This document shows positions 2,047-22,164 of a stretch of 64,000 nucleotides of DNA, piece by piece. Numbering within the stretch: the first letter of the stretch is position 1; the number at the start of each line of letters is the position of its first letter. Both the position numbers and the translations under genes were made by a program. Location: IMG/VR virus record IMGVR_UViG_3300042879_006196, positions 1 to 64,000 of that record; one strand, given 5' to 3'. Under the pieces are notes generated by a model that saw only the letters and a program-made list of their open reading frames with translations, had not been told where the DNA came from and ran no database searches.

Positions 2047-2559
2047 ATGAAAAAAACTTTCATTTTACTTAATGAAAAAGTTCTCAAGTTCAGAGAAGCT
2101 TTGGTTATAGGTAGTGACGGTAAGCCTCTTGGTGTAATAAATACTAGAGAAGCCTTGAATATTGCAAAAAACGAGGGTTTGGATTTATTTGCTGTAAATA
2201 CAAACGTTTCTCCAGTGGTTTGCAAAATCGTTGACTATGGTCGCATGAAATATGAAGAAGATAAAAGAGAGCGAGCCAACCATAAAGCTAAACAAGAAAC
2301 TAAAGAAATAAAAATTTCCCCACGTATTCAGCAAAACGATCTCAATACTTTTACAAAAAGAGCAATTGAATTTTTGGAGCATAATGATAAAGTAAAAATC
2401 ACTTGTGTTTTCAAACATCGTGAATTAGAACACTCTGAGCTTGGATTGAATAAAATCGAGATTATGCTAAAGAATTTGGAAGATTATTGCTCTTATGAGG
2501 GCAAACCTATTCTCAACGGCAAATACATGTCCATAACTGTAAACCCAAAGAAAAAATGA
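2047..2559 (+). CDS. infC: Translation initiation factor IF-3
   Basis: NE..., GLDL..V......VCKIVDYGRMKYE, KEIKISP.I...D, FL...DKVK motifs. Confidence 0.92.
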   Translation: MKKTFILLNEKVLKFREALVIGSDGKPLGVINTREALNIAKNEGLDLFAVNTNVSPVVCKIVDYGRMKYEEDKRERANHKAKQETKEIKISPRIQQNDLNTFTKRAIEFLEHNDKVKITCVFKHRELEHSELGLNKIEIMLKNLEDYCSYEGKPILNGKYMSITVNPKKK

Positions 2560-3474: not shown

Positions 3475-4080
3475 ATGCAAGTATTTATGCCCTATGCGGA
3501 TTTTGAAAAAAGTGTTCAAGCACTTGATGACTCGCGGCTTAGAAAACAAGCCTTAGAATCAACTCAATTATTAGACATCATGTTCAATATACCAACAAAA
3601 ACAGGAAAACCTCGCAAAGGTTGGATGACACACCCTGCTTTGATAGCTTGGCAAAGCACTCCTGGTGCCTTGATAGAACATTTAATTCACAATGTAATTG
3701 AAATTGAAAAGAGAGGATTCAAAACTGACTACGCAACAGCTAAAATCAAGCAATATGCAACATTCACGACAAGCCTGTTACGCCCAATTTGGCTAGGTGA
3801 CGAAGCAATACACTCTTCACACAGAATCAGATTATTGCAAAAAGGCTTCGAAGAGAAATTCAAAGACAGTAAGAAAGCTGACGAAACAATAAAATGGTAT
3901 TCACAGTTTAGCTGGGATGAAATGAATCATGATGATTTTTTTAATCAAGAATATTTTTGGGCTACAAACATTACTAGCAATTCTTATGATTTGTCTCAAC
4001 GTGTAGAAAAAAATACATTGAAGCTGAAAAAGGACTTAATCGAAAAATTTGGCACAAATCCTTTTGTTTCTAGCGTATAA
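3475..4080 (+). CDS. Pyrimidine-dimer DNA glycosylase-like protein (DenV/MSMEG_6728 type)
   Basis: MQ.FMPY.DF....ALD..RL.KQ..E..Q.L, GW..HPA...W, HSSHR..LL.K. Confidence 0.8.
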   Translation: MQVFMPYADFEKSVQALDDSRLRKQALESTQLLDIMFNIPTKTGKPRKGWMTHPALIAWQSTPGALIEHLIHNVIEIEKRGFKTDYATAKIKQYATFTTSLLRPIWLGDEAIHSSHRIRLLQKGFEEKFKDSKKADETIKWYSQFSWDEMNHDDFFNQEYFWATNITSNSYDLSQRVEKNTLKLKKDLIEKFGTNPFVSSV

Positions 4081-4850: not shown

Positions 4851-4896
4851 ACTTTAACACAATCTGATACACAATCTGAAACCTGAAGACACACTA

Positions 4897-4917
4897 TCGC
4901 CTCAATTTCTGAGGCGA
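4897..4917. terminator. Hairpin between convergent transcription units
   Basis: TCGCCTCA-ATTTC-TGAGGCGA. Confidence 0.55.
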
Positions 4918-4968
4918 ATAAATCAACTAATCGCCTCAGAACACACAGCAAACACTCAGATTGTGTGT

Positions 4969-5142
4969 TTATTTTTTAAGCACTAAAAATAATGTGAGCA
5001 GAGAAAGTAAAAGCGAAGCTAAGCCAACAAATGCACCAAAGATTGTGCCGAATGTATTCCAGAAAGCCATTTTTGTAGTCCAGCCTGTGTTTACCACCAC
5101 TTGCTTTGCATTTATCTCAACATCATGTTCTTCGCTTTCCAT
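4969..5142 (-). CDS. 57-aa membrane protein
   Basis: MESEEHDVEI...FGAFVGLASLLLSLLTLFLVLKK; GGAGG Shine-Dalgarno just upstream on the - strand. Confidence 0.65.
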   Translation of the reverse strand: MESEEHDVEINAKQVVVNTGWTTKMAFWNTFGTIFGAFVGLASLLLSLLTLFLVLKK

Positions 5143-5151
5143 TCCTGCCTC

Positions 5152-5397
5152 CTAATCTGTAAACTTTTGTAATTTTTTTGCTGTATTTAATGAAGTATAC
5201 ATTTCTGGGCTCACACCCTCAGGTAAATCACCCAGCAATCCTAATTTAGAAATCAATACTGGTTTATCCTCTGTTAAAACATTGGAAAATTCACTCGGAT
5301 CAAATTCAGATTGTGTTTGTTTTGAAATTAAATCTTGTGCCATTTTCGTAACAAAAGAAATTTCAAACTGTGATTTACCTAAAGGAGTGATTTTCAT
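5152..5397 (-). CDS. Hypothetical protein
   Basis: 81-aa ORF with GAGGA upstream; middle gene of a three-gene - strand unit. Confidence 0.65.
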   Translation of the reverse strand: MKITPLGKSQFEISFVTKMAQDLISKQTQSEFDPSEFSNVLTEDKPVLISKLGLLGDLPEGVSPEMYTSLNTAKKLQKFTD

Positions 5398-5400
5398 AAG

Positions 5401-5484
5401 TTATTCCTCAAATTTTATATGACCGAACAAAGTGTTGAACATTTCAGTGTAAAAATCTATGATCGCTTTTTCAAATTTCTTCAT
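5401..5484 (-). CDS. 27-aa peptide MKKFEKAIIDFYTEMFNTLFGHIKFEE
   Basis: GGAGGT Shine-Dalgarno upstream; CGTATAAT -10-like element on the - strand near 5550. Confidence 0.5.
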   Translation of the reverse strand: MKKFEKAIIDFYTEMFNTLFGHIKFEE

Positions 5485-5625
5485 GTAGTGTATTACCTCC
5501 TATTACACAATCTTTGTGTTTTTTGAAGCACTACTTTGAGCTACATTTAATTATACGGTTTTTTAATTACAAAAACCTGTTGAAAATTATGAAACTATTG
5601 ATTAGTAACTCTCGTATAAATTATT

Positions 5626-6111
5626 ATGGCTATAATATCACTAGCGAAGGCTTTAAAAATAAAAAATCGAATCACAAGTAAAATTACATCTATCAAAAAA
5701 GAAATTTCTGCACATAATGCTTACTTGGTTGACAAAGATATTCCTGTTGATGAAATTAAACTACAAGTTGATGTAAATAATTCAATTAAAGAATTGGAAA
5801 AACTCACAGCATTTCTTGTAAAGGTCAAAGCAGAAATCAATAAAAGTAATTCGGATTCTGCTGATCTAATTTTTGAGCTTTCTGAGACTAAAGGATTGAT
5901 TGCTTTTTACGAAAACTTAGATTGTTCACAAAATTTATCGTCTTATTATAGACCACAATCTAACGATATAAAAAGGGTTCAAATTGATGTAATTCAACAA
6001 AACTTAATTGTAAAAACTTTAATCAAAAAGTCTGAAAAATTACAAGATCAGTTGGATGAATTCAATGCAGTTAAAAAAGTAGTTATTGATGATGAAATTT
6101 TAGAGCTGTAA
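5626..6111 (+). CDS. Coiled-coil protein resembling the DIP1984 family
   Basis: SLAKALK.KNR...I..., K.EIN.SN, C-terminal L...LD.FNA; recognised from memory. Confidence 0.5.
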   Translation: MAIISLAKALKIKNRITSKITSIKKEISAHNAYLVDKDIPVDEIKLQVDVNNSIKELEKLTAFLVKVKAEINKSNSDSADLIFELSETKGLIAFYENLDCSQNLSSYYRPQSNDIKRVQIDVIQQNLIVKTLIKKSEKLQDQLDEFNAVKKVVIDDEILEL

Positions 6112-6432
6112 CATTTTGCTCCTTTGGGGGCAAAGAGGCAATCTGACAGAAATATTTTATTTCTGTGAGCAAAAAAAAACACTGTATGTTGAAAAACAGT
6201 TTATTGAAAAAGAAGAAGATGTGGTCAAAATTCACGAAAAATAACCATTGTCAAAATTCATTGATATAAAACTTAAAATTGACAACTCAAACCTTTTCTG
6301 CTCTTTACAGATTGTCTCATTTTTTTATAACAAAACATCAGCAGAAGCCAAATAAACTTCAGCTAACAAAATCGCCCATCTTTTCGGAGGTGGGTTTTTT
6401 TCCAGATTTAACAATCTGAGAGTATAATTGGC

Positions 6433-7545
6433 ATGACATCATTTGATACACTTTATCACAAAGGCAAAAACGGAGAACTTCGACAATGGCGCACTTGGGC
6501 AGACGGAGATTCTATTTATACTGAGTATGGCTTAGTTAATGGAGCTTTACAAACCTCCAGAAAAACATGCACTCCTAAAAACATTGGAAAGAAAAACTTC
6601 ACCACAGCATCTGAGCAAGCTATTGCTGAGTCCAAATCTCTGCATAAATTCAAAATAGAGAGGAAATACTCAGCCACAAAAGAAGAGGCACAAATGCCTC
6701 TATTGTTACCGATGCTTGCTGGCAAATATGATGCTAAAAAACATAATTCACATTATTTTTGCCAGCCTAAGCTAGATGGTGTACGATGTATTGCCAGATG
6801 GGAAGGAGATTCTGTTGTCTTGTATTCAAGGCAAGGCAAGATTTACGATGTTAAGCACATTTCCGAGCAATTAAAAGATGTACTTGGTAAAGATGATGTC
6901 TTTGATGGTGAAATCTACATTCATGGATTGTCTTTACAATCTTTAATTTCATTGGTTAAAAAACCACAATCTGATTCATTGAAGTTAGAGTATCACATCT
7001 ATGATTATCCTGTTGTTAATGGCAATGAAGACCTCACCACTCAGGAAAGACTAGAATTACTAGCTGATATTAATATTAGTAATAAGCAAAGCTTACAGAT
7101 TGTGTGTGGGTATGATATTGGTTATGACAAAAACGCTATTACAGACTATCAAAGCAAGTTTTTAGCCAATGGCTATGAAGGTCTAATGCTTAGAGAAAAA
7201 GACAGTAAGTATCTTTGGGGTTATCGCTCTAATGATTTGCTCAAAGTAAAAACTTTCCAAGATTCTGAATTTCTTGTGGTAGACATCATTGAAGGAGAAG
7301 GAAAAATGGAAGGACATGCTGTTGTTATCTGCAAGAATGATTTAACAGATGATACTTTCAAAGTAACACCTAAAACCACAATGGAATCAAGAAAAGAAAT
7401 CTATGATAATAAATCAGATTATGTGGGAAGAATGTACACAGTAAAGTATTTCGATAGAACTGATGATTTAATTCCAAGATTTCATGTTGGTATTGCTTTT
7501 CGAGAGGATTTAGATTTTCCAGAAAATTCCACATTGCATAATTAA
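6433..7545 (+). CDS. ATP-dependent DNA ligase
   Basis: PMLA, QPKLDGVRC (motif I), FDGEIY, GYEGLMLR, LLKVK, FDRT...PRF. Confidence 0.95.
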   Translation: MTSFDTLYHKGKNGELRQWRTWADGDSIYTEYGLVNGALQTSRKTCTPKNIGKKNFTTASEQAIAESKSLHKFKIERKYSATKEEAQMPLLLPMLAGKYDAKKHNSHYFCQPKLDGVRCIARWEGDSVVLYSRQGKIYDVKHISEQLKDVLGKDDVFDGEIYIHGLSLQSLISLVKKPQSDSLKLEYHIYDYPVVNGNEDLTTQERLELLADINISNKQSLQIVCGYDIGYDKNAITDYQSKFLANGYEGLMLREKDSKYLWGYRSNDLLKVKTFQDSEFLVVDIIEGEGKMEGHAVVICKNDLTDDTFKVTPKTTMESRKEIYDNKSDYVGRMYTVKYFDRTDDLIPRFHVGIAFREDLDFPENSTLHN

Positions 7546-7617
7546 GTATATTCAGATTGTGTGGAAAAGTTTGATTCACTTTATAAAAAACTTAAATATC
7601 GAGCGTATATATAATTG

Positions 7618-8145
7618 ATGAAGAAATTAACTCAAAAACAATACAACATAGATAGGCAAGTAATTGAAATTGATAATTCCTATGGCGAAGTTTTCTTTCC
7701 AGTAAAATTGAAAGAAGCATATTCTGTTTTTGACAATCATTTAAAAGTAAATTATATTGTCAAACAAATACATTTGAACCCAATTTACAAACATACAATC
7801 AAAGTGAACGATGAAGGTTTGACAGTTTTGGAAATTAAGGGTGCCAAAAGTCCTTTTTTGGTTGAATTCATTTTAGACGTAAGTCTTGAAGAATTCAAAC
7901 GAATTGCACATCTTGCTTTGACAAAATTTGAAGAAAATTTTGAATTTGACCGTAAAAAAGACTATTTTATTTGTAAATTGTATCCTTGTAAATTAAAAGA
8001 TTTTCAGCATCGAAAAGAAATAGAAAAACACTACAAAGGAACACGTTATGACGGTCGTATTTACCAAAGCTTTTGTCAAGATACAAATTCTTTACAAAAA
8101 GAAATAATGCTTTGTGAAAATAATCCTAATCAAGCGTATATATAA
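7618..8145 (+). CDS. Hypothetical protein
   Basis: ORF behind a GCGTATATAT -10-like element. Confidence 0.7.
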   Translation: MKKLTQKQYNIDRQVIEIDNSYGEVFFPVKLKEAYSVFDNHLKVNYIVKQIHLNPIYKHTIKVNDEGLTVLEIKGAKSPFLVEFILDVSLEEFKRIAHLALTKFEENFEFDRKKDYFICKLYPCKLKDFQHRKEIEKHYKGTRYDGRIYQSFCQDTNSLQKEIMLCENNPNQAYI

Positions 8146-8148
8146 TTG

Positions 8149-8283
8149 ATGAAGAAATTAATCTCTCTCGCACTCGTCGTTATGGCACTTTCGATGGTAG
8201 CATGCAATTCTACCACCACTGCCACCGAAACCAATGCCCCAGCACCTGTTGCCGAAGGCAATGCACCAGCAAAAGCTAAGTAA
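8149..8283 (+). CDS. 44-aa putative lipoprotein
   Basis: MKKLISLALVVMALSMVAC: basic N-terminus, hydrophobic core, lipobox Cys, then an Ala/Pro/Thr-rich tail. Confidence 0.7.
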   Translation: MKKLISLALVVMALSMVACNSTTTATETNAPAPVAEGNAPAKAK

Positions 8284-8360
8284 GCTTCAGCTAACGAAAT
8301 CGCCCATCTTTTCGAAGGTGGGTTTTTTTCCAGATTTAACATTAACGAAGTATATTAGAT

Positions 8361-9869
8361 ATGAATAATTTTATTAAAACACCATTCGAAATTACGGACG
8401 CATACAAGCTTTCTCACTGGAGACAATATCCAGAAGGAACCACTGGTGTGTACTCCAACTTTACACCTAGAAAATCACGAAGACCAGGAATTGACAAGTT
8501 TGTTTTCTTTGGAATGCAAGCTTTTTTACAAGAACTTAATGAGCAATTTGACAAAAATTTCTTTTCATTAACAACAGAAGAAGCTGTTCAAAGATTTGAT
8601 GCTTTTTACATTGGATTCTTCGGATTATCAAATCCACACAGCAATGAACAAGTTGGTAAACTTCACCAACTAGGCTATTTGCCGATTAGGATAAAAGCTT
8701 TACCTGAAGGCTCTGTGGTTAATCATAACATTCCTGTGGCAACTATGCAATCTACACACGAAGATTTCTTTTGGTTTACACAATGGATCGAAACTTGGAT
8801 GTCAGATTCAATTTGGAAACCATCCACTTCGGCAACCACTTCTTTTTATTATCGAAAAATATTCAATTTTTACAATAAACTTACATCCGATAATGATTGG
8901 TTTGTAGATTGGCAAGGACATGATTTTTCTATGAGAGGCATGTCAAATGTGCTTGACGCATGTGCTTCTGGAGCAGGACATTTGCTCAGCTTCAAAGGTA
9001 CAGACACTTGCCCTTCACTTTCATGGATTAATGAATATTATCCTGGTGAAAATGGTTTGCTTGGAAGTTCTGTCCCAGCTACAGAACACTCTGTACAAAC
9101 TGCATTTTTGCCTGAAGTAAGTAACGATACAGATGTTTGTGACGAACAGTACACGGCTCATACTCTTGAGCTTTATCCAGAAGGGATTGTATCTCAAGTA
9201 AGTGATGGATATGATTTTTGGCGATTCGTAACTGTCATTTTGCCTAAGTTCAAGGAACAAATCATGTCTAGAGATGGTAAATTTGTCATCAGACCTGATT
9301 CTTCTCCTAAAACTCCTGTTGAGGTTATCATCGGTGACTCAGAGGCTCCAGAAGGCACACCTGAAAACAAAGGATTAATTGAATGTCTGTATGAAATTTT
9401 TGGTGGTACTTTCAATTCAAAAGGCTATAAAGTATTGGATTCGCATATCGGTGCAATTTATGGTGATTCTATCACGCTGGAATACGCTGAAGCTATTCTT
9501 TCTGGTCTTGAAAAGAAAGGATATTCTTCTGACAATATTGTGCTCGGCATAGGGTCATTCACTTATCAATATGTTACAAGAGACACTCATGGCATAGCAA
9601 TTAAAGCCACTGCTGTTTCTTCTGGTCGCGGAGAAGATCAAAAGTGGAGAGCTACTTACAAAGACCCCAAAACAGACAACTCAGGTAAGAAATCAGCTAA
9701 AGGTTTCTTAAGAGTGGATATGTTTGATGGAGATTATGTTCTTTCACAAAATGTCACACAAGAAGAAGAAGGCGGCGCATTGGAACTTGTCTACGAAAAT
9801 AGCAAGATTCTCAGATCGGAATCCTTCGCAGAAGTTCGACAAACACTCTCTGGGTTTTTACCCAACTAA
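8361..9869 (+). CDS. nadV: Nicotinamide phosphoribosyltransferase-like protein (NadV/Namat)
   Basis: TDAYKLSH..QYP, HDF..RG, VPATEHSV, V.D.YD, VIRPDS, IYGDSIT, KDPKTD...KKSAKG. Confidence 0.95.
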   Translation: MNNFIKTPFEITDAYKLSHWRQYPEGTTGVYSNFTPRKSRRPGIDKFVFFGMQAFLQELNEQFDKNFFSLTTEEAVQRFDAFYIGFFGLSNPHSNEQVGKLHQLGYLPIRIKALPEGSVVNHNIPVATMQSTHEDFFWFTQWIETWMSDSIWKPSTSATTSFYYRKIFNFYNKLTSDNDWFVDWQGHDFSMRGMSNVLDACASGAGHLLSFKGTDTCPSLSWINEYYPGENGLLGSSVPATEHSVQTAFLPEVSNDTDVCDEQYTAHTLELYPEGIVSQVSDGYDFWRFVTVILPKFKEQIMSRDGKFVIRPDSSPKTPVEVIIGDSEAPEGTPENKGLIECLYEIFGGTFNSKGYKVLDSHIGAIYGDSITLEYAEAILSGLEKKGYSSDNIVLGIGSFTYQYVTRDTHGIAIKATAVSSGRGEDQKWRATYKDPKTDNSGKKSAKGFLRVDMFDGDYVLSQNVTQEEEGGALELVYENSKILRSESFAEVRQTLSGFLPN

Positions 9870-9913
9870 TTGACATCGGGCGAGAAATCGCCCGATTCTA
9901 CCAATACTATATT

Positions 9914-10732
9914 ATGAAAGCAAACGATCCAAACATACTATCACTGATGCAAATCAAAGACCAACATGGAACTATCATCCCTTGGGAATACAATCTCTTT
10001 CCAGATGGTCAAGTGCAATTTAAAATCAAAAAGAGTTATTTAGAAAATCAAGGACTGAGTTTAGAAGTAAAAGCATCCTTGTGTAATCCAACTATTTTAG
10101 ATTTATTTAATCAACTAAAATTCACTTTACCCTTTTGCTCGTTTAATATAAATTACTACTATGGAGCCAGATGTGATAAAAGTTCAACAGACGAATATAT
10201 TGTTTGCAATGTTGCACAACAACATGCCTCCACTGAGTATAGTACATCGTTTTTAGCACCACATTGTAACAAATTGCTTGAAAGTGATATGTACAAATAT
10301 TACATTCCAGATTGCATCAATTTAAATGATTATCATTTAATTGTCTGCCCTGATGAATCAGCTTTTGAAAGATACGAAGAATTCATTGAAAATCACAATT
10401 GTATGATCTGTGAGAAAGAAAGAGATCAAGATACAGGTAGAATTATTTCACACAAAATTCCAAATTTCTCGCCAAATTTCAGAAAAGTGTTAGTAATTGA
10501 TGATCTTTGTGATGGAGGTAATACCTTTATGTCTGTTGCAGATAGTATGCCTTCAGAAACAGAAAAACATCTATTCATTTTTCATGGTGTATTTAGTAAT
10601 AATGCTTTGGAAAAATTAACAGAAAAATTTGACAAGATATTCGTTTCTAATTCTTTACCAAATTACAAAGAACAAATGGCTAGAATTCCAAATTTTGAAG
10701 ATAAAGTGGTGGTTTTCGATGTCTGGAATTGA
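9914..10732 (+). CDS. Ribose-phosphate pyrophosphokinase-like protein (Adps-like)
   Basis: FPDGQV, AR.DK, PH, PD..A..R, VIDDLCDGGNTF PRPP-binding motif, HG.F. Confidence 0.88.
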   Translation: MKANDPNILSLMQIKDQHGTIIPWEYNLFPDGQVQFKIKKSYLENQGLSLEVKASLCNPTILDLFNQLKFTLPFCSFNINYYYGARCDKSSTDEYIVCNVAQQHASTEYSTSFLAPHCNKLLESDMYKYYIPDCINLNDYHLIVCPDESAFERYEEFIENHNCMICEKERDQDTGRIISHKIPNFSPNFRKVLVIDDLCDGGNTFMSVADSMPSETEKHLFIFHGVFSNNALEKLTEKFDKIFVSNSLPNYKEQMARIPNFEDKVVVFDVWN

Positions 10733-11102
10733 TTTTTCTCTCTCTGCAAGACAAATTGCAGAGATGATACACTCTGTTACGTGCCAAATCCCAAGAATGG
10801 ATGGGTCTGTTGTATTAAAATGGGAAAAGTTGTCTGAGGATGAAAAAGTATTAGCAGAAAAAGCTGTGATTGATTTGTATTCCAATCCACCTAGAACTGC
10901 TGAAGAAAATCACGAACTTTGGATGGATTTTAAATTGAAAGATGGTTGGACTTTAGGTGATTTTGATTACAATAACAAAAAACATCCATGTCTTATTCAT
11001 TTCAAAGATTTGCCTCCCTCAGAAGTGTGTAAAGATATTGTTTGGGAACATTTAATCAATGCCTTTCGCTCATTTTATTCTGAGAATTCTAACTCAAATT
11101 GA
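10719..11102 (+). CDS. RyR-domain protein
   Basis: E.NHE.WM..KL.DGW..G......KKHPCL..F.DLP.SE..KD signature. Confidence 0.8.
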   Translation: MSGIDFSLSARQIAEMIHSVTCQIPRMDGSVVLKWEKLSEDEKVLAEKAVIDLYSNPPRTAEENHELWMDFKLKDGWTLGDFDYNNKKHPCLIHFKDLPPSEVCKDIVWEHLINAFRSFYSENSNSN

Positions 11103-11126: not shown

Positions 11127-11993
11127 ATGAGAGATTATTCAGAAAAACATTGTTGGCAGTATGACATCAGATTGAAAAATTTTGATCTTGATTTGAAAGA
11201 GGCTAATTTTACTGAAAACTATACACACAATCTCACTGTAAATGATTTCGAATACAAACATGTTGTAGATACAAAAGAAAAACAAGAACTTAAAAAATTT
11301 ATCGAACGACATGAATGGCTTGGTAATTTGTCACAAATGACAACACATTGGTTTGGTGCCTATCACAATGGAAAACTAGCTGGTGGCATTTTGTTCAATA
11401 TGCCAAATGCTTTTAGTAAGATTCTTGGAGAAAACACACCTGATTTAGAAAGACTTATCAGCAGAGGGGCATGCATTTCATGGTCGCCAAAATGTTTGGC
11501 ATCGTCTTTTATGATGTGGTGTATTAATTGGATGGTAAAAAACACTCAATATAGATTGTTCACAGCTTATTCTGATCCTGAAGCAAAAGAACTAGGAACA
11601 ATTTATCAAGCGTGTAATTTTTACTATCTTGGAAAAAATTCAGGAACTTTGACCAGATACATTAACCCCTACTCTGGTAAGATTGTGTCAGATAGATATT
11701 TTAGAACTACTTCAGCATATAAAAAATATGCCAAAGAGCTAGGCATTCAATGGCAGAAGTCGTGGAATAAACCAAATGGCAGAATAAATATATCTGCCGT
11801 CCCGAAAGAAATCATGGATCAATTAAGAAAAAAATCTAAAGAAAAAATATCTGAAACTCAACCAATCATTTCAACGTATAAACATAAATACGTGTATGTT
11901 TTAGGTGAAAATAAAAAAGAAACCAAAAAACTCAGAAAAGAATTTGAACTTAGAAATAAAACTTATCCTTATCCTAAAGAGAGAGGGCAGTAA
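11127..11993 (+). CDS. Mom-like GNAT (putative DNA adenine modification)
   Basis: FIE.HEWLG, LI.R, AYSDP...ELGTIYQACNFYYLG motif typical of Mom-family proteins. Confidence 0.7.
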   Translation: MRDYSEKHCWQYDIRLKNFDLDLKEANFTENYTHNLTVNDFEYKHVVDTKEKQELKKFIERHEWLGNLSQMTTHWFGAYHNGKLAGGILFNMPNAFSKILGENTPDLERLISRGACISWSPKCLASSFMMWCINWMVKNTQYRLFTAYSDPEAKELGTIYQACNFYYLGKNSGTLTRYINPYSGKIVSDRYFRTTSAYKKYAKELGIQWQKSWNKPNGRINISAVPKEIMDQLRKKSKEKISETQPIISTYKHKYVYVLGENKKETKKLRKEFELRNKTYPYPKERGQ

Positions 11994-12028
11994 TTTTCCA
12001 GGTTTAACAAAAACGGAATATAATCAAT

Positions 12029-13171
12029 ATGAACAATAATTCAAACAATCAACGAAGTGCTCCATCTGCTAAAATTATTAGACTTGGTGAAGGAGCATTT
12101 ATCACTGTCGTTATGGATGGTGAATCTTTGACTTTAAGAGCATCTGACTCTCAAGAATCATTTGACAAAGCATTAGAGGCTTGCAAAGCTGAAGACTGGG
12201 ACTTGCTTTATACTTGCATGAGACCTGTGAAAAAATATGTCTCTGAAATCAAAGGTGTCGAAATTAATGAAAATGGTGTGTTTTACAATGGTGAAATTAT
12301 TAACAACACTTTGTCAAAGAGAATTTTGGACTTTGCATTGTCTGGTCTTGATTCAAAACCATTGTGTAAGTTTTTAGAAAAACTCATGAATAATCCTTCT
12401 AGAAGAGCAGTGAATGAGCTTTACACATTCTTGGAACATCAAAACCTACCAATCACTGATAATGGTAATTTTCTTGCCTATAAGGGTTTGCTTTCAAATT
12501 ATTACTCAATCACCTCTGGTAGTGCACAACTTATCCAAGGAACAGTTAAAAGTGGCAGTATTTACAATGGTATTGGTGAAGTCATTGAAATGAAGCGTAA
12601 TGATGTTGATGATGATAAAGACAGAGGTTGCTCTTATGGGCTACATGCTGGAACTATGGAATATGCAAGTGGTTTTGCACAAGGAAAATGCGTGATTGTT
12701 GAAATTAATCCTGCTGATGTTGTAAGCATTCCTGTAGATTGTAATTTCCAAAAGCTGAGAACATGTAAATATAAGGTGGTTGGAGAATACGAAGCACCTC
12801 TTGTTGAACCACTCTATGCATCAAATTGGATTGAAGATGATATTGGATGTGATTGCACAGATTGTGATTGTGTAGAAACTACTGAGACTACAGAAGCCTC
12901 TGAGATTACCTTAGACACATCTAGCAATCCAATTGAAGTTTTTGCATTCGATACACCTAATTCAAGCTGGATTGATTTTGTTGAATGGGGAGTGAATGAA
13001 GAACTAGATCGTGTATTATCGGTGGTGCTTGGAACTGGTGAATCAATGGATTTCATTCATGTCCCACTGTGGCAATTCAGTCAATTCCAGAAATCTGTTG
13101 AATCAGGACAATCTGCTGGTAAGTTTTTCCACCAATTTATCAAATCAGTGTATGAGCAAATTCAGTATTGA
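12029..13171 (+). CDS. rIIB: rIIB-like protein with C-terminal KTSC-like domain
   Basis: NPS..AV.ELY.FL....LPIT..G.FLAYK, EM.R..V..D....CS.GLH, V.INPADVVSIP.D....K.R.C.Y.V; tail SS.I....VP....F....SAGKFF...IK. Confidence 0.88.
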   Translation: MNNNSNNQRSAPSAKIIRLGEGAFITVVMDGESLTLRASDSQESFDKALEACKAEDWDLLYTCMRPVKKYVSEIKGVEINENGVFYNGEIINNTLSKRILDFALSGLDSKPLCKFLEKLMNNPSRRAVNELYTFLEHQNLPITDNGNFLAYKGLLSNYYSITSGSAQLIQGTVKSGSIYNGIGEVIEMKRNDVDDDKDRGCSYGLHAGTMEYASGFAQGKCVIVEINPADVVSIPVDCNFQKLRTCKYKVVGEYEAPLVEPLYASNWIEDDIGCDCTDCDCVETTETTEASEITLDTSSNPIEVFAFDTPNSSWIDFVEWGVNEELDRVLSVVLGTGESMDFIHVPLWQFSQFQKSVESGQSAGKFFHQFIKSVYEQIQY

Positions 13172-13235
13172 AAATGAAATCGGGCAAAATCTGCCCGATT
13201 TTTTCCAGCTTTAACATAACCTGATTATTATAGAT

Positions 13236-13967: not shown

Positions 13968-14042
13968 GGGCTTATAGCTTAATGGTAAAGCGCTCGGCTC
14001 ATAACCGAAGGAGTGTAGGTTCAATCCCTACTGAGCCCACCA
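13968..14042 (+). tRNA. tRNA with CAU anticodon (Ile2 or elongator Met)
   Basis: GGGCTTA/TGAGCCC acceptor stem, CTCATAA loop, GGTTCAATCC, CCA. Confidence 0.9.
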
Positions 14043-14478: not shown

Positions 14479-17400
14479 ATGATTAATACAGATTGTGTGA
14501 AAATATATGAGGAAGAATATCAGGTGAGCAAGCAGGTGAGCCATCAGCAGGTGATGGATCGGGTGATGACTCTAGTGTGGTATCAGATTCGCCACGAGGT
14601 AGAGGATCAGGTATTAAGTGAGGTGTGGCTTAAGGTGTGGTATGATTAATACAGATTGTGTGGAAGTAAAAAAACAGGCACATAATCAGCTAAGGAATCA
14701 GGTGTTGAATCACGTGCGGTATCAGGTGTTGAATCACGTGCGGTATCAGGTGCTGAATCAGGTGTGGTATCTGGGGAGGGATCAGGTGTGGGTTAAGGTG
14801 TTTAGATGATTAATACAGATTGTGTGGAGATAAAAGATTGGGGTCATATAGAGGATCACGTGGAATATCAAACTTCGATTCAGGTATCAAATGAGGTGTG
14901 GAAGCAGGTGTATCTTCATCTGAGGAATCGAATGAAGAAAGAGATGTATTTCTACTTAAGGTGGGAGGTGTGGTTTAAGGTGTGGTTTGATTAATACAGA
15001 TTGTGTGGAGATAAAAGATTGGGGTCATATATTGGATCATGTGGAATATCAAATTTCGACTCAGGTGTCAAGTGAGGTGTGGAAGCAGGTGTATTCGCAG
15101 GTGAGAAATCAAACGATGGATGAAATGTATTTCTACGAGAGAAAACAGGTGTGGCTTAAGGTGTGGTTTGATTAATACAGATTGTGTGGAGATGTATGAG
15201 ATTAAAGATCAGGTGTGGGATAAGGTGGAGTATGAGGTTTCGATTCAAGTGAGGGATCAGGTGTGGGGTTATTTGTATTCCCTCATAAGGTACGAGGTGA
15301 GGCTTAAGGTGTGGTTTGATTAATACAGATTGTGTGGAGATAAAAGCGATTAGATATCAGGAGAGAAAACAGGTATGTGATCAGGTGAGAAATCAGGTGG
15401 GGAATGAGGTGAGGAATGAGGTGTGGCATCAGGTAGAGTATCAGGTGTGGGCAAAGGTGTGGTGGTCAGGTGAGGGGAATCACTTGAGTGATCGGATTTT
15501 CAAATGATTAATACAGATTGTTTAAAGGTGAAGGTTGAAGATCAGGTGCAGAATCAGGTGTATAATCTCCTAAGGATTCATGTGAAGCTCCAGTTGGACT
15601 ATCAGGTGTGGGATCGTTTGTTTTGGGAAATGCGGTGGAAGGTGTTCAAATGATTAATACAGATTGTGTGGAGATATTTGAGATTGAAAGTAAGGCGTAT
15701 GATCAGGTTATGGAACTGGTCTATTATCAGGTTTGGGAACAGGGGTGGTCGAGGGTAAGAGTGTATATGTGTCGTGAGGTGTTCAGATGATTAATACAGA
15801 TTGTGTGGAGATATTTAACATTAAAGATCGAGTGGGGGAGCAGGTGATATTTGAGGTGAGGATTAAGGTGGTGGATAAGGTGTTGTGGAAGGTGTATGAT
15901 TGGGCGAGGGATCAGGTAAAGGGTAAGGTAAGAGTGAAGGTGTTCAGATGATTAATACAGATTGTGTGGAAGTGAAGAATCAGGTGAAGAATCAAATGAG
16001 GAATCATGTACAGTATCATGTGCAGACTCAGGTGTATGAAAAGGTAGATTATCAGGTGTGGGATAAGGTGTGGTATCTAATGAGGAATAAGGTGATAAAT
16101 GATTGATATAGATTGTGTGGAGATATTTGAGATTAGAGATCGGGTGAAAAATCAGGTGGTGGATAAGGTGTTGTGGAAGGTGTGGTATCTGGCGAGGAAT
16201 CAGGTGAGGGGTCAGGTGTATCTAAAGGTGTGGGATAAGGTGTGTGATCAAGTTGTGTGTCAGGTGTGGCTTAAGGTGCTCAAATGATTAATACAGATTG
16301 TATGGTAGTGAAGAATCAGGTGAAGAATCAGGTGTTGGATCAGGTGAGTTATCAGGTGTGGGATCAGGTGCTGTATCAGATGTGGCATCAGGTGTATCAT
16401 CACGTGAGGGATCAGGTGTGGTATCAAGTGGAGGATCAGGTGTATGATAAGGTGTGGCATCCTGTGAAATATCGGGTAAAGGGTCAGGTGTTCGATGATT
16501 AATACAGATTGTTTGAAGGTGAAACATCAATTTAAGAAAGTGGAATCTCAGGTGTGGGATCAGGTGATAGATGATTAATACAGATTGTGTTGGAGTAAAT
16601 CATAAAGTATTTTTTGAGAATGTGTCCTTTGAATTGTGGCATCAGACGAGGAATAATCTAAGGTGGCAGGTGAGGAACCAGGTGTGGTTTAAGGTGTATC
16701 TTCAGGTATGGCATAAGGTGTTCAGATGATTAATACAGATTGTGTGGAGATATTTGAGAATCGAAATCAGGTGATAACTCAGTTGAGTGATCAGGTGAGT
16801 TCGAATCTGGTGCATAGTCAGGTGTGGTTTAAGGTGTTCAGATGATTAATACAGATTGTGTGGAGATATTTGAGAATCTAAATCGGGTAGAGGGTAAGGT
16901 GAGGCATCAGGCAAGAGATCAGGTGAGTAATCATGTGTGGTATAAGTTGCGGGATAAGGTGTGGTGGGAGATGTGGTGCTACGTAAGAGTGAAGGCGTGG
17001 AGGAAAATGTTCGAATGATTAATACAGATTGTGTGGAGATGTATGATAATATTGAGTTATGGTGGAAGGTGACAGATAAAGTGTATGCTGTGGCGAGGAG
17101 TCAGGTGCAGAATCAGGTATTGTTTCATACAAAGACTCATCCTAAGGTGAAACTGAAGGTGAAAGATCAGGTATATTATGAGGTGCTCAGATGATTAATA
17201 CAGATTGTGTGGAGATATTTGAGATTGAAGATCAGGGTTGGGATCAGGTGAGTGATCAGGTGAGTGATCAGGTGGAGTATCAGGTGTGGGAGCAGGTGTG
17301 GTGGAAGGTGTGGGATCAGGTGTGGTATCAGGTGTGGTATCAGGTGTGGTATCTGGCGTGGGATAAGGCGTGGGATGAGGTGATAAATGATTAATACAGA

Positions 17401-18082
17401 TTGTGTGGAGATGTATGAGATTGAAAATCAGGTGTGGGATCAGGTGAGTGATCAGGTGGAGCATCAAGTGTGGTATCAAGTGGAGCATCCTTTGTATGCT
17501 CAGGCGAGGGATCAAGTGATGAACCAGGTGTGGCTCAAGGTGTTCAGATGATTAATACAGATTGTGTTGAGATATTTGAGATTGAAGATCAGGCGTTGGA
17601 TCAGGTGAGTGATCAGGTGGAGTGGGAGGTGTGGCATCATGTGGAATATAAGGTGTGGTATAATGTGAGTAATCAGGTGAAAAACCCAGTGTGGTTTAAG
17701 GTGTTCGTATGATTAATACAGATTGTGTGGATGTGAAGGTTGAGGATCAGATTTGGCGTCAGGTGAGTTATCAGGTGGAGTGGGATACGCGGCATCATGT
17801 GGAGGTGTGGTATAATGTGAGTAAGCAGGTGAAAAACCCAGTGTGGTTTAAGGTGTTCGTATGATTAATACAGATTGTGTGGGTGTGAAGGTTGAGGATC
17901 AGATTTGGTGTCAAGTGGAAAATCAGGTGGAGTGTCAGTTGTCGTACTGGGTATGTGATGAGGTGAGATTTGATGCGGTTGATACAGTTTGGCATGAAGT
18001 GGGGTATAAGTTGTATGATCACATGGTTTTTCCAGGTTTAACATTACCCGATTATACTGGATATGATTCAAAAAAAAGATGA
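14479..18082 (+). repeat. MINTDCV micro-ORF array, block 1 (22 units by manual count)
   Basis: Repeat (A/T)TGATTAATACAGATTGTGTG at 14479, 14642, 14806, 14987, 15168, 15316, 15504, 15650, 15787, 15948, 16099, 16284, 16495, 16571, 16726, 16842, 17015, 17191, 17387, 17548, 17709, 17861; each opens a QVW-rich ORF that ends in the next repeat, except the last (17861), which runs on into the rIIA promoter. Confidence 0.95.
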
Positions 18083-20204
18083 CTTTGTAATCGACATGAA
18101 TTCCTCATTTGCACAACGAAAGTTCTCAGTTAAAACTGAGAATCTTGCTCATTTGTTCGACATAATGAGAAATTACATTTACTCAAACAAAATTCTTGCA
18201 GTTATTAGAGAGTACTCTACAAATGCAATTGATGCAAACATAAAAAATAACTTTGCATCTAGACCAATTTCAATCACATTGCCTACGTACTTCGAACCTA
18301 CATTTTCTGTAAGAGACTATGGCGCAGGTTTGAGCGAAGAAGAAATTTTTGAAATTTATTCTAGTTATGGAGAATCCACTAAAAGAGAAAGCAATGAATA
18401 CATTGGTAATCTTGGTATTGGAAGCAAATCTGGCTTCGCTTATTCTGATTCATTTACCATTACTTCATTCCATAATGGAACAAAAAAAATCTATGAAGCT
18501 TTCATTGATGAATCACAAATTGGTACAATTGCAAAAATTCATGAAGAAAAAAATGACAGTGAAAGCGGATTGTTAATATCTATTTCTGTTAATAAAAATG
18601 ACATCAATTATTTCAAAATTGAAGCAGAAAAGTTTTTCATGTGGTGGGATGTTACACCTGAATTTATTGGTGTCCAACCTGATTTTATGTCTCAATTTTC
18701 AACATACAAAAATGAATATTCTTCTAGTATTTGTCAAATCTTTTCAAAAAGATATTCTGAAACTTCAATTTCAGTTAAAATGGGTAATATTCTTTATCCA
18801 GTTACAAATTTTGATAAAATTGATTGTGATTGGTTGAAAGGTTTGTCTGTTGTCATTAAAGTAGGGCTTGGAGAAGTAAGTCACTCCGCTTCAAGAGAAT
18901 CTCTTGAAATGAATAGTTTAACTGTAGATACAATTAATACATATCTTCAAAAAATAAGAGAGACACTTACAGCACATTTCCTGAAGCAAATTGATGATTG
19001 CAAAACACCTTGGGGCGCAATCATAGAATATCATAATATGTCTTTTTTCGCTCAACAAACGATTGGTAAAAAAATATCTTGGAAAGGTAAAACTCTATCA
19101 ACGCAGTTACCGTCTAGTTTTCAATATTGTTTCTTTGATACATACTACAAAAAATGGAAGAAAAATGTAACTGTTCGATACTCCGCTGGAGACAGTGTGG
19201 CTTTTATTTTGAATGATGGAGGTTTTCCAGCGTCACAAACTAGAGCAAGGCTTCTAGCCGCACGTGATAAACTCAACAAGACAAACCTTTACACAAGTAT
19301 CATTTACATAAAAGGTTCAATCTCAGACACAAATGATTTACTAAAAAGTGACGAATTGATTGGATCAAATTATGTCAAGCTTTCAACGGTATTAGCAATT
19401 CCTACTAAAAATAAAAGTAAAAAAGCTGTTGCTGGAAAGATTCTTGAATGGAATTCCACAACAACATTTCCATACTCTACTTGCTGGGACTCTGTAGATA
19501 TACCAGACAGTGATGAAGAAATGATTTATGTTGAGATTGAAAAATTTGTGCCTGTCATGAGCAATTTTAATAACAGTAGCCGAGCGAGGTTTTATGATCT
19601 TAAAAATTGTTTGAATTTGATTCGTGATGTGGATAATAAAGTTTTCAAAATTTACGGAGTAAAAGCTGGTCAAAAATTACCTAAAAATTTTATTAGTCTG
19701 CATGATTACATGGAAAGGATGATTGTAAAATTCATTAAAACAGACGATTTTGTTGATAGTTATGTTCAACATGCAATTAGTCAAGTTAATTTAAGAACAT
19801 CATTCTTGAGTAGTGCAAGAACTCTAATGCAAACATTTGATACTGATATAATGAACAAATTCAATGATGTAAAATGCGAAAAGCTCAAGGCAATGTTTTA
19901 CTTTACTAAGCCTATGATGAATAAATTTTATCATCTTTTGACGAACATAAAAAACATTTCATTTCATTTTCCTAAAATAACCACTGCCTTGTCAGAGTTG
20001 GATGATTTGAAAGACAAAAGATTACAAGTTTGGAATCAAAACAAAAATTATTGTTTGGAAAATTATCCAATGATTGAATTTCATTATTCTCCAAACACTA
20101 TGGCTTTGACAAAAATGTTTGAATATGTAAATTCAATTCACGCAACACAAAACACTGAGAGGCACAAAAAGCCAATCAAAATTTCATCAAAAATTAATGT
20201 TTGA
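18063..20204 (+). CDS. rIIA: rIIA-like protein (N-terminal GHKL ATPase)
   Basis: Y.NK..AVIRE...NA.DA, F.VRDYG.GLS, YG.STKR.SN..IG.LG.GSKS.FAYSDSF, S.SRESL. Confidence 0.9.
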   Translation: MIQKKDDFVIDMNSSFAQRKFSVKTENLAHLFDIMRNYIYSNKILAVIREYSTNAIDANIKNNFASRPISITLPTYFEPTFSVRDYGAGLSEEEIFEIYSSYGESTKRESNEYIGNLGIGSKSGFAYSDSFTITSFHNGTKKIYEAFIDESQIGTIAKIHEEKNDSESGLLISISVNKNDINYFKIEAEKFFMWWDVTPEFIGVQPDFMSQFSTYKNEYSSSICQIFSKRYSETSISVKMGNILYPVTNFDKIDCDWLKGLSVVIKVGLGEVSHSASRESLEMNSLTVDTINTYLQKIRETLTAHFLKQIDDCKTPWGAIIEYHNMSFFAQQTIGKKISWKGKTLSTQLPSSFQYCFFDTYYKKWKKNVTVRYSAGDSVAFILNDGGFPASQTRARLLAARDKLNKTNLYTSIIYIKGSISDTNDLLKSDELIGSNYVKLSTVLAIPTKNKSKKAVAGKILEWNSTTTFPYSTCWDSVDIPDSDEEMIYVEIEKFVPVMSNFNNSSRARFYDLKNCLNLIRDVDNKVFKIYGVKAGQKLPKNFISLHDYMERMIVKFIKTDDFVDSYVQHAISQVNLRTSFLSSARTLMQTFDTDIMNKFNDVKCEKLKAMFYFTKPMMNKFYHLLTNIKNISFHFPKITTALSELDDLKDKRLQVWNQNKNYCLENYPMIEFHYSPNTMALTKMFEYVNSIHATQNTERHKKPIKISSKINV

Positions 20205-22078: not shown

Positions 22079-22113
22079 AAGAGGACAATTCAAATATTGT
22101 CCTCTTTATTTTT
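22079..22113 (+). terminator. Intrinsic terminator closing the DUF6745 operon
   Basis: AAGAGGACAAT...ATTGTCCTCTT followed by a T-run. Confidence 0.8.
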
Positions 22114-22164
22114 CAATTTTTGCCCGATTTTTTCCAGATTTAACAATTATTATTTATATTAAAA

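What the first reader, a model, noticed from the sequence alone, without database searches (positions are those of the whole stretch)
8361..11102. NARP1-like NAD+ reconstitution pair with an overlapping RyR-domain gene
Seen: a NAMPT-like gene, a PRS-like gene and a RyR-domain ORF overlapping the PRS stop, all behind one promoter. Established: phage NARP1 (Adps, a PRS homologue, plus Namat, a NAMPT homologue) rebuilds NAD+ from ADP-ribose and nicotinamide to counter NAD-depleting defences such as Thoeris, DSR and SIR2-HerA. No NMNAT (NARP2) is visible in this window. Inference: the RyR protein may be a third component that handles ADPR-derived signals or substrates.
Basis: partly seen in the sequence, partly recalled or inferred. 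Interest (0 to 1): 0.62.

Follow-up and report, generated by a model that had tools for sequence, protein, structure and literature searches.

The report
Phage NAD-rebuilding operon with RyDEP-like gene
A large lake-water phage carries three co-transcribed genes that most likely rebuild the host's NAD+ and disarm the cyclic ADP-ribose alarm signal of Thoeris defence, a combination first described in a mycobacteriophage in a 2026 preprint.

Summary
Window 8361-11102 holds three + strand genes: a Namat-type NAMPT homologue (8361-9869), an Adps-type PRPP-synthetase homologue (9914-10732) and a 127-aa RyR-domain gene (10719-11102) whose ATG overlaps the Adps stop by 14 nt. One promoter-like motif (8327-8356) precedes them; the next lies at 11995.

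The enzymes carry the published NARP1 signatures: the Namat clamp motif GSFTYQYVTRD, and the Adps loop DDLCDGGNTF with all mutationally tested Adps residues. The whole 347-kb record has no NMNAT or Nudix gene.

The RyR protein keeps the catalytic dyad and ligand residues of RyDEP, the RyR-domain glycosidase that sits inside the NARP1 operon of mycobacteriophage DyoEdafos. A May 2026 preprint showed that RyDEP cleaves 2'/3'cADPR to ADPR and so feeds NARP1.

What I add:
- The module is conserved, under purifying selection, in related lake phages.
- RyR-NARP1 adjacency recurs in four gene orders but is rare overall.
- A Trp three residues after the catalytic Asp marks DyoEdafos RyDEP and most NARP1-linked copies. 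Tested non-catalytic homologues and unlinked copies have Phe.

Sequence cannot decide whether this protein is a glycosidase or a sponge. Verdict: a new member of a known kind.

The parts
8302..8330 (+). Terminator-like hairpin plus T-run that closes the upstream unit. Its T-run runs into the promoter-like motif.
   Evidence: -13.3 kcal/mol, z -2.6; sequence
8327..8356 (+). Phage-specific promoter-like motif TTTCCAGATTTAACA-N9-TATATT, ending 4 nt before the Namat ATG.
   Evidence: about 64 copies on the + strand, 0 on the - strand, about 1 expected; 45 of 64 end exactly 4 nt before an ATG
8361..9869 (+). Namat-type nicotinamide ADP-ribose transferase (NAMPT homologue), 502 aa. Clamp-helix motif GSFTYQYVTRD at residues 398-408; catalytic His243.
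   Evidence: motif definition from PMC12774641
9872..9898 (+). Strong intergenic hairpin between Namat and Adps. No U-run and no promoter motif follow it, so it is a possible attenuator, processing site or stabiliser (inferred).
   Evidence: -17 kcal/mol, z -4.6, 0 of 200 shuffles fold as well
9914..10732 (+). Adps-type ADP-ribose pyrophosphokinase (PRPP-synthetase-like), 272 aa. PP loop DDLCDGGNTF (residues 196-205); K168 corresponds to ICP1 Lys185.
   Evidence: residue roles from PMC13586617
10719..11102 (+). RyDEP-family RyR (R12) domain protein, 127 aa, with its start overlapping the Adps stop by 14 nt. H65, W68, H89 and D106 correspond to RyDEP H75, W78, H100 and D117. W109 is the Trp three residues after the catalytic Asp.
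11127..11993 (+). Mom-like DNA-modification gene in the same promoter-to-promoter unit. It is a neighbouring counter-defence candidate, not part of the NAD pathway.
   Evidence: PF25680 9e-15, phrog_1384; no promoter motif between 8356 and 11995
11995..12024 (+). Next copy of the promoter-like motif, with no terminator before it. It precedes the rIIB-like gene 12029-13171.
13176..13207 (+). First strong terminator-like hairpin plus U-run downstream of the module.
   Evidence: -15.9 kcal/mol, z -4.2

Best explanation
This is a three-gene counter-defence module of a freshwater jumbo phage (347 kb). It combines NARP1 with a RyDEP-family protein.

**Proposed mechanism**
- When a host system such as type I Thoeris, DSR, SIR2-HerA or SEFIR splits NAD+ into ADP-ribose and nicotinamide, Adps (9914-10732) pyrophosphorylates ADPR with ATP to give ADPR-PP.
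- Namat (8361-9869) joins ADPR-PP to nicotinamide and so restores NAD+.
- The RyR-domain protein (10719-11102) is translationally coupled to Adps. It binds the Thoeris second messengers 2'cADPR and 3'cADPR.
- It either hydrolyses their ribose-ribose bond to linear ADPR, which silences the alarm and supplies NARP1 with substrate (favoured, about 0.55), or only sequesters them as a sponge (about 0.35).

**Shown here by sequence or structure prediction**
- Family membership of all three proteins.
- Conservation of the catalytic and ligand residues.
- The operon layout.
- Conservation of the module and purifying selection on it.

**Taken from the literature**
- The chemistry of Adps, Namat and RyDEP.

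**Inferred**
- That these particular proteins perform that chemistry.
- That they are co-transcribed.
For: **Namat**
- The motif GSFTYQYVTRD fits the Namat-specific consensus GS-X-phi-X-phi-X-phi-TRD.
- The best solved relatives are 9W5W/9W5X, the SpbetaL1 Namat, at E 4e-126. Nampts score about 1e-55.
- It is 46% identical to DyoEdafos Namat.

**Adps**
- It scores 51.6 bits against the 113-bit cut-off of TIGR01251. The validated DyoEdafos Adps is also below cut-off, at 81.7 bits.
- It is 37% identical to DyoEdafos Adps over the C-terminal domain, E 8e-23.
- ICP1 Adps residues R87, H121, D161, K185, D212, D213, C215, D216 and F221 correspond to window R86, H117, D147, K168, D196, D197, C199, D200 and F205.
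- The loop DDICDGG.TF is the consensus of 44 NARP1-linked homologues.
- The predicted structure is a full two-domain PRPS fold.

**RyR protein**
- PF02026 at 3e-8.
- A hit to PDB 35TM, which is RyDEP.
- All four key RyDEP residues are aligned.
- The AF2 model has pLDDT 89.5 and matches R12 domains.

**Genome and context**
- No NMNAT or Nudix gene and only one RyR gene occur in the whole record.
- The module Namat-Adps-RyR, with its 14-nt overlap, is kept in relatives down to 65% RyR identity. dN/dS is about 0.1.
- Independent RyR-NARP1 adjacency is seen in DyoEdafos (Adps-RyDEP-Namat), L012 (RyR-Namat-Adps) and an Ackermannviridae-like record (RyR-Adps-Namat).

**Trp signature**
- Trp at the third position after the catalytic Asp is shared with the only proven glycosidase.
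- It is absent from 74 of 74 unlinked homologues and from the non-catalytic homologues H1 and H3-H8.
Against: - There is no biochemical or expression evidence for these proteins. The 'RNA?' runs are probably DNA.
- The catalytic dyad is also conserved in homologues that the preprint found to be non-catalytic sponges. Residue conservation therefore does not show hydrolysis.
- RyDEP Q54, which the preprint mutated, aligns to L45 here.
- The Adps adenine-contact residues Phe18, Phe92 and Phe223 of ICP1 are not recognisably kept.
- Only the C-terminal half of Adps matches sequence profiles.
- Linkage is rare: 1 of 80 Namat loci and 0 of 80 RyR loci in IMG/VR.
- One NARP1-linked RyR is of the Phe type.
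- The host, and whether it carries Thoeris, are unknown.
Confidence: 0.78

Rival explanations
1. The RyR protein is only a sponge. It binds 2'/3'cADPR tightly without cleaving it. It sits beside NARP1 because counter-defence genes cluster, not because it feeds the pathway.
For: - All 8 other RyDEP homologues tested in the preprint were non-catalytic, and 6 of them bound the signals, despite a conserved dyad.
- Most RyR genes are not near NARP1.
- The neighbours here are other counter-defence candidates, Mom-like and rIIB-like.
- In Ackermannviridae, RyR and NARP1 alternate at one locus, as in an anti-defence hot spot.
- RyDEP Q54 is not conserved here.
Against: - The start/stop overlap with Adps is kept across diverged relatives. 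DyoEdafos shows the same tight coupling.
- The Trp after the catalytic Asp is shared with the one proven glycosidase. Seven of the eight tested non-catalytic homologues have Phe there.
Confidence: 0.35
2. The two enzymes are an ordinary PRPP synthetase plus Nampt that boost nucleotide or NMN supply (NARP2-like or general metabolism). The RyR gene is then unrelated.
For: - Both belong to the Prs and Nampt superfamilies and are usually annotated as such.
- Namat retains some PRPP activity in vitro according to PMC12774641.
Against: - The Namat clamp motif is present, and the protein is far closer to Namat than to Nampt.
- The PRS-like protein fails every PRS equivalog cut-off and carries the Adps loop.
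- There is no NMNAT in the 347-kb record to convert NMN to NAD+.
- 77 of 80 Namat relatives sit beside an Adps.
Confidence: 0.05
3. The RyR protein acts on or senses a different adenine nucleotide, for example ATP, ADPR itself, His-ADPR or another ADPR conjugate. It might act as a regulator or substrate carrier for Adps rather than against Thoeris cADPR signals.
For: - R12 domains of animal RyRs bind ATP, ADP and AMP-PCP with the same residues.
- 2 of 8 tested homologues did not bind cADPR isomers.
- Translational coupling to Adps is compatible with a partner role.
Against: - The only experimental data for phage members of this family concern 2'/3'cADPR.
- PMC12774641 reports no stable Adps-Namat complex, so no scaffold role is indicated (section title).
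Confidence: 0.1

Closest known systems
RyDEP within the NARP1 operon of Mycobacterium phage DyoEdafos (gp77 Adps, gp78 RyDEP, gp79 Namat; bioRxiv 10.64898/2026.05.28.727677)
   Same: - The same three protein families sit in one tight same-strand cluster.
- The RyR gene directly follows Adps with overlapping start and stop.
- The H/D dyad, the Trp and His ligand residues, and the Trp three residues after the Asp are conserved.
- The proteins are small single-domain ones (127 against 138 aa).
   Different: - The gene order is Namat-Adps-RyR instead of Adps-RyDEP-Namat.
- RyR identity is only about 25-31%, and Q54 is not conserved.
- The phage is a 347-kb low-GC lake phage with non-SD starts, not a 78-kb actinophage.
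- Activity is untested.
NARP1 (Adps + Namat) of phages SpbetaL1, Bas63, ICP1 and FADO (Osterman et al., bioRxiv 10.1101/2024.02.11.579819; PMC12774641; PMC13586617)
   Same: - The Namat clamp motif and the Adps PP loop with its catalytic Lys are present.
- The genes are adjacent.
- NMNAT is absent from the genome.
   Different: - The order Namat then Adps is the minority arrangement. Most of the 77 sampled IMG/VR pairs run Adps then Namat, and L012, L036 and L047 run Namat then Adps.
- A strong hairpin separates the two genes.
- A third, RyR-domain gene is attached.
- The N-terminal domain of Adps is very diverged.
Sponge-type phage RyR-domain proteins (preprint homologues H4 from a Ruegeria phage and H7 from a Pectobacterium phage)
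   Same: - The same Pfam family and about 30% identity.
- The same conserved His, Trp, His and Asp.
   Different: - Those genes stand alone, away from NARP1.
- They have Phe, not Trp, three residues after the Asp.
NARP2 (Nampt + NMNAT, Vibrio phage KVP40) and NARP3 (PnuC + NadR)
   Same: They are phage NAD+ restoration pathways against NAD-depleting defence.
   Different: - No NMNAT/NadR-type adenylyltransferase domain (PF01467) and no Nudix gene occur anywhere in the record.
- The NAMPT homologue here has the Namat motif.

Membership tests
Namat (NARP1 nicotinamide ADP-ribose transferase) | Nampt-like catalytic core with the conserved catalytic histidine | tested here: met
   PF04095 and PF18127 hits. 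NF006629 scores 477 bits against a 405-bit cut-off. The block VPATEHSV with H243 is invariant among four Namats.
Namat (NARP1 nicotinamide ADP-ribose transferase) | Selectivity-clamp helix motif GS-X-phi1-X-phi2-X-phi3-TRD with aromatic X (PMC12774641) | tested here: met
   GSFTYQYVTRD at residues 398-408: X = F, Y, Y; phi = T, Q, V. The motif is also present in the DyoEdafos, Mvi-JY20 and JSF12 homologues.
Namat (NARP1 nicotinamide ADP-ribose transferase) | Closer to validated Namat than to Nampt, and encoded next to Adps | tested here: met
   9W5W/9W5X score E 4e-126, while all Nampts score 1e-55 or worse. The Adps gene begins 45 nt after the Namat stop codon, with 44 nt between the two genes. 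77 of 80 relatives are Adps-linked.
Namat (NARP1 nicotinamide ADP-ribose transferase) | Preference for ADPR-PP over PRPP | not testable with these tools
   This needs an enzyme assay.
Adps (NARP1 ADP-ribose pyrophosphokinase) | PRPS-like two-domain fold that falls outside canonical Prs families | tested here: met
   The AF2 model (pLDDT 80.7) matches PRPP synthetases over about 280 columns, TM 0.6-0.7. TIGR01251 scores 51.6 bits against a 113-bit cut-off, and every equivalog is far below cut-off.
Adps (NARP1 ADP-ribose pyrophosphokinase) | Acceptor and catalytic residues of ICP1 Adps: R87, H121, D161, K185, D212, D213, D216 | tested here: met
   They align to R86, H117, D147, K168, D196, D197 and D200. 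They are invariant or nearly so in 44 NARP1-linked homologues. Most are shared with Prs, so they show competence, not specificity.
Adps (NARP1 ADP-ribose pyrophosphokinase) | Remodelled PP loop (ICP1 C215-S220 plus F221) conserved across Adps homologues | tested here: met
   The window has DDLCDGGNTF; ICP1 has DDICDGAASF; DyoEdafos has DDICDGGGTF; the family consensus is DDICDGGRTF. From my own knowledge, canonical Prs has DD[MI]ID/ST[GA]GT here.
Adps (NARP1 ADP-ribose pyrophosphokinase) | Adenine-contact aromatics Phe18, Phe92 and Phe223 of ICP1 | tested here: inconclusive
   They are not recognisably conserved here or in DyoEdafos Adps. The N-terminal alignment is uncertain.
RyDEP family (phage RyR/R12-domain defence-evasion proteins) | PF02026 domain and R12-like four-helix fold | tested here: met
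   PF02026 scores 34.3 bits against a 27.4-bit cut-off. PDB 35TM scores E 1e-3, and RyR R12 domains reach 1e-17. The AF2 model (pLDDT 89.5) matches the B. thetaiotaomicron RyR-like protein and human RyR3 R12.
RyDEP family (phage RyR/R12-domain defence-evasion proteins) | Catalytic dyad H75/D117 and ligand residues W78/H100 | tested here: met
   H65, D106, W68 and H89 align to them. They are invariant in 42 homologues. This is not sufficient for catalysis, because sponges keep them too.
RyDEP family (phage RyR/R12-domain defence-evasion proteins) | Q54, a further residue mutated in the preprint | tested here: not met
   It aligns to L45, with a one-residue gap nearby, so the alignment is uncertain. 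It is not conserved in the other homologues either.
RyDEP family (phage RyR/R12-domain defence-evasion proteins) | Glycosidase activity on 2'/3'cADPR, or nanomolar binding | not testable with these tools
   This needs TLC, LC-MS or EMSA.
NARP2 | An NMNAT encoded in the same genome | tested here: not met
   PF01467 finds no match in the 347-kb record, while the control rings in 14 of 14 genomes. There is no Nudix gene either.

The most novel reading that the evidence does not exclude
NARP1-linked RyR proteins that carry Trp three residues after the catalytic Asp (K-D-x-x-W) may form the catalytic, glycosidase branch of the RyDEP family. Those found so far are DyoEdafos RyDEP, this lake-phage family and contig L012.

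The far more common K-D-x-x-F proteins would then be sponges. On this reading the window protein would be the second known cADPR glycosidase lineage. A single aromatic residue would be a readable marker, or even a determinant, of the switch between enzyme and sponge.
Probability: 0.35. Interest if true: 0.55.

Novelty: new member of a known kind. Interest (0 to 1): 0.36.

Why it matters
- The finding extends the RyDEP-plus-NARP1 combination from one actinophage to an abundant freshwater jumbo-phage family found in 17 or more lake metagenome runs. The gene order differs there.
- Silencing the Thoeris signal and repairing the NAD+ damage have been coupled several times independently.
- It gives a concrete candidate for a second catalytic RyDEP.
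- It gives a testable sequence marker, Trp versus Phe after the catalytic Asp, for a question the preprint left open: what makes a RyR-domain protein an enzyme rather than a sponge.
- As annotation, it corrects the usual labels 'nicotinamide phosphoribosyltransferase', 'ribose-phosphate pyrophosphokinase' and 'hypothetical protein'.

Tried and rejected
- **Single-protein scan.** The search for related loci with the RyR protein alone found nothing in IMG/VR. The word-based homologue search gave only 3 relatives. Alignments were needed to reach further.
- **Expression.** Two runs labelled RNA-Seq hold parts of the region, but the tool rates them as probably DNA. They are short Logan contigs, so they give no evidence on transcription, strand or co-transcription.
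- **RyR tree.** The tree (47 rows, 125 columns) stayed largely unresolved, with very long DyoEdafos and L012 branches. The grouping of window family with L012 (SH-aLRT 82) may be long-branch attraction. I do not rely on it.
- **Adps structure.** The ICP1 Adps structure is not in the PDB copies, so Adps was compared by sequence to ICP1 taken from its genome record.
- **PDB 35TM.** It is absent from the Foldseek library, which ends in April 2026, so fold support rests on R12 domains.
- **Trp marker is not exclusive.** I considered that NARP1 linkage is exclusive to Trp-type RyRs. This is rejected: a Phe-type two-domain RyR lies directly upstream of Adps-Namat in record OR844942.1.
- **P0007 relative.** I first thought that the relative P0007 lacks linkage. 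The C-terminal end of an Adps gene in fact lies 0.9 kb upstream of it.
- **Other points.** No alternative genetic code was used.
Full report
**Setting**

The window is the first 64 kb of a 347,392-bp virus record rated 99% complete. Its GC content is 32-44%. The same DNA is held by at least 17 lake-water metagenome runs. The exact RyR protein occurs in 112 blocks of the assembly collection. This is therefore an abundant freshwater jumbo phage, and its host is unknown.

**Observation**

Three + strand ORFs lie at 8361-9869, 9914-10732 and 10629/10719-11102.

- The first hits NAPRTase and NAMPT_N in Pfam, and phrog_448 at 3e-177.
- The second hits phrog_619, ribose-phosphate pyrophosphokinase, at 5e-31.
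- The third hits PF02026 (RyR) above its gathering score.
- The RyR gene most likely starts at the ATG at 10719. Independent gene calls on other contigs use that start, and homologues begin at the equivalent Met.
- That ATG lies 14 nt before the end of the Adps stop codon.
- The same overlap is conserved in relatives whose RyR proteins are 92% and 66% identical.
- Against those relatives, dN/dS is 0.04 for Namat, 0.15 for Adps and 0.10-0.12 for RyR. All three are selected genes.

**Transcription unit**

- A 30-nt motif, TTTCCAGNTTTAACA-N9-TATWWT, occurs 61-64 times on the + strand of the window and never on the - strand. About 1 match is expected by chance.
- In 45 of 64 copies the motif ends exactly 4 nt before an ATG.
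- One copy lies at 8327-8356, fused to a terminator-like hairpin at 8302-8323.
- No further copy appears until 11995, even allowing three mismatches.
- Between Namat and Adps lies a strong hairpin at 9872-9898 (-17 kcal/mol, z -4.6). It has no U-run.
- The first clear terminator downstream is at 13176-13207.
The unit also carries a Mom-like gene (11127-11993) and may read into an rIIB-like gene (12029-13171).
- I could get no RNA evidence. The two 'RNA?' runs are probably DNA.

**Namat or Nampt**

- PMC12774641 defines a Namat-specific clamp-helix motif, GS-X-phi-X-phi-X-phi-TRD, with aromatic X residues that stack on the adenine of ADPR-PP.
- The window protein reads GSFTYQYVTRD, which is a perfect fit.
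- Its best solved relatives are 9W5W and 9W5X, the SpbetaL1 Namat, at E 4e-126. Every Nampt scores about 1e-55 or worse.
- It is 46% identical to DyoEdafos gp79, which was used as Namat in vitro.

**Adps or Prs**

- The protein scores 51.6 bits on TIGR01251, whose cut-off is 113. It fails every Prs equivalog, as does the validated DyoEdafos Adps.
- I took ICP1 Adps from its genome record, and its numbering reproduces the residues named in PMC13586617.
- In alignment, R87, H121, D161, K185, D212, D213, C215, D216 and F221 correspond to window R86, H117, D147, K168, D196, D197, C199, D200 and F205.
- In 44 homologues that sit next to a Namat, the loop consensus is DDICDGGRTF. The window has DDLCDGGNTF.
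- A predicted structure (pLDDT 80.7) is a complete two-domain PRPS fold. The poorly matching N-terminal half is therefore diverged, not missing.
- The adenine-contact phenylalanines of ICP1 are not recognisably kept. That point stays open.
- The whole record has no NMNAT (PF01467) and no Nudix gene, so NARP2 and a NadR-type route are excluded.

**The RyR protein**

- A May 2026 preprint (10.64898/2026.05.28.727677) describes RyDEP, gp78 of mycobacteriophage DyoEdafos. Its gene is inserted between Adps (gp77) and Namat (gp79).
- RyDEP is an inverting glycosidase that opens 2'cADPR and 3'cADPR to linear ADPR. [quoted passage not shown] Together with Adps and Namat it converts 2'cADPR into NAD+.
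- Its catalytic dyad is H75/D117. W78 stacks on the adenine and H100 holds the phosphates.
- The window protein aligns with H65, D106, W68 and H89 at those positions.
- It hits the RyDEP entry 35TM and many R12 domains. Its model (pLDDT 89.5) matches R12-type structures.
- It is therefore a member of the RyDEP family, in the same operon context.
- The preprint also shows that eight other homologues keep these residues, that none of the eight is catalytic, and that six bind the signals as sponges. Conservation therefore cannot decide between enzyme and sponge.

**Linkage elsewhere**

- Of 80 IMG/VR loci with a Namat relative, 77 carry Adps but only one carries a RyR gene. That one is L012, a 197-kb contig with the order RyR-Namat-Adps.
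- Of 80 IMG/VR loci with a RyR relative, none carries NARP1.
- In the Lewando, PhiEaH1, phiAS5, Nepra, Kuttervirus Phi_10, Moby, KpS110 and Ruegeria V12 records, the stretch fetched around the RyR gene (1.5-9 kb each side) holds no NARP1 gene.
- Within the window's own phage family the module is constant. Eight metagenome loci with RyR identity from 65 to 99% all keep Namat-Adps-RyR. The 51%-identical relative has an Adps end 0.9 kb upstream.
- A fourth arrangement, two-domain RyR followed by Adps and Namat, occurs in record OR844942.1, an Ackermannviridae-like sequence.
- In Agtrevirus Gloob, NARP1 occupies the locus where Kuttervirus and Taipeivirus carry RyR.
- Adjacency is thus rare, but it has arisen repeatedly, in four gene orders. 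That argues for a functional tie or a shared anti-defence hot spot.

**A possible marker**

- Three residues after the catalytic Asp, DyoEdafos RyDEP, the window family and L012 all have Trp.
- 73 of 74 distinct unlinked IMG/VR homologues have Phe there, and one has Leu.
- The non-catalytic homologues H1 and H3-H8 in the preprint's Supplementary Table 1 also have Phe. H2 reads A-D-A-I-T-W and is unlinked.
- The NARP1-linked Ackermannviridae-like copy is of the Phe type, so the marker tracks the RyDEP-like branch and not linkage as such.
- This is a correlation over few independent lineages and is a lead only. It raises my odds for hydrolysis to about 0.55.

**Verdict**

This is a new member of a known kind: NARP1 with a RyDEP-family third gene, in a new phage lineage and a new gene order. 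It comes with one testable addition, the Trp/Phe marker.

Noticed in passing
window 14479-18082 and about 22100-32000 (+ strand): These regions have extreme GC skew (0.5-0.6) and no ORF of 150 aa or more. They consist of tandem arrays of dozens of small paralogous genes of 46-73 aa.

Each gene starts MINTDCVE and continues with 4-residue periodic x-Q-V-x repeats (DNA period 12, unit GATCAGGTGTGG). Each start overlaps the previous stop. About 20 copies lie in the first array. I know of no function or family for them.
   Followed up: partly
window, about 64 sites on the + strand, e.g. 1225, 6399, 8327, 11995, 13202; dense from 34 kb onward: A near-invariant 30-nt motif, TTTCCAGGTTTAACA-N9-TTATAAT, occurs only on the + strand. 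It usually ends exactly 4 nt before an ATG and often follows directly on a terminator hairpin.

The few starts I inspected by eye (Namat, Adps, RyR, Mom-like) show no clear Shine-Dalgarno sequence. This suggests a phage promoter that gives leaderless or near-leaderless mRNAs.
   Followed up: partly
window 2047-2559 (+): The phage encodes a full-length translation initiation factor IF-3 homologue (IF3_N 6e-21, IF3_C 6e-24). That is notable beside the apparently leaderless gene starts.
   Followed up: no
L188 (OR844942.1) 4883-8382; L191 (Shigella phage Gloob); L176 (Salmonella phage Phi_10); L190 (Klebsiella phage KpS110): In Ackermannviridae, one locus upstream of a VWA-domain gene holds different cargo in different phages:
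- a two-domain RyR gene in Kuttervirus and Taipeivirus;
- NARP1 in Agtrevirus Gloob;
- both in the unverified 'Enterococcus phage Efm 3-10' record.

This looks like a counter-defence hot spot.
   Followed up: partly
L008 (Arthrobacter phage Lewando) 5016-5853: The RyR gene (gp74) lies two genes upstream of a gene annotated as a PnuC-like nicotinamide riboside transporter (gp76). This may link RyR to another NAD-salvage part, as in NARP3.
   Followed up: no
L172 and L183 (metagenome relatives), directly downstream of the RyR gene: In relatives with 65-67% identical RyR, the gene after RyR is a Thg1-like gene (PF04446, tRNA-His guanylyltransferase family) instead of the Mom-like gene of the window.
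   Followed up: no
window 8146-8283 (+), overlapping 8130-8342 (-): A small ORF has a lipoprotein-like signal (MKKLISLALVVMALSMVAC...) just before the terminator at 8302. Gene callers instead call the 70-aa ORF on the opposite strand. It is unclear which is real.
   Followed up: no
window 6433-7545, 3475-4080, 18063-20204, 20475-21569, 13968-14042: Neighbouring genes are an ATP-dependent DNA ligase, a pyrimidine-dimer glycosylase, a 713-aa HATPase_c_3 protein, a DUF6745 protein and a tRNA-Met. Four more tRNAs lie at 48.9-56.9 kb.
   Followed up: no
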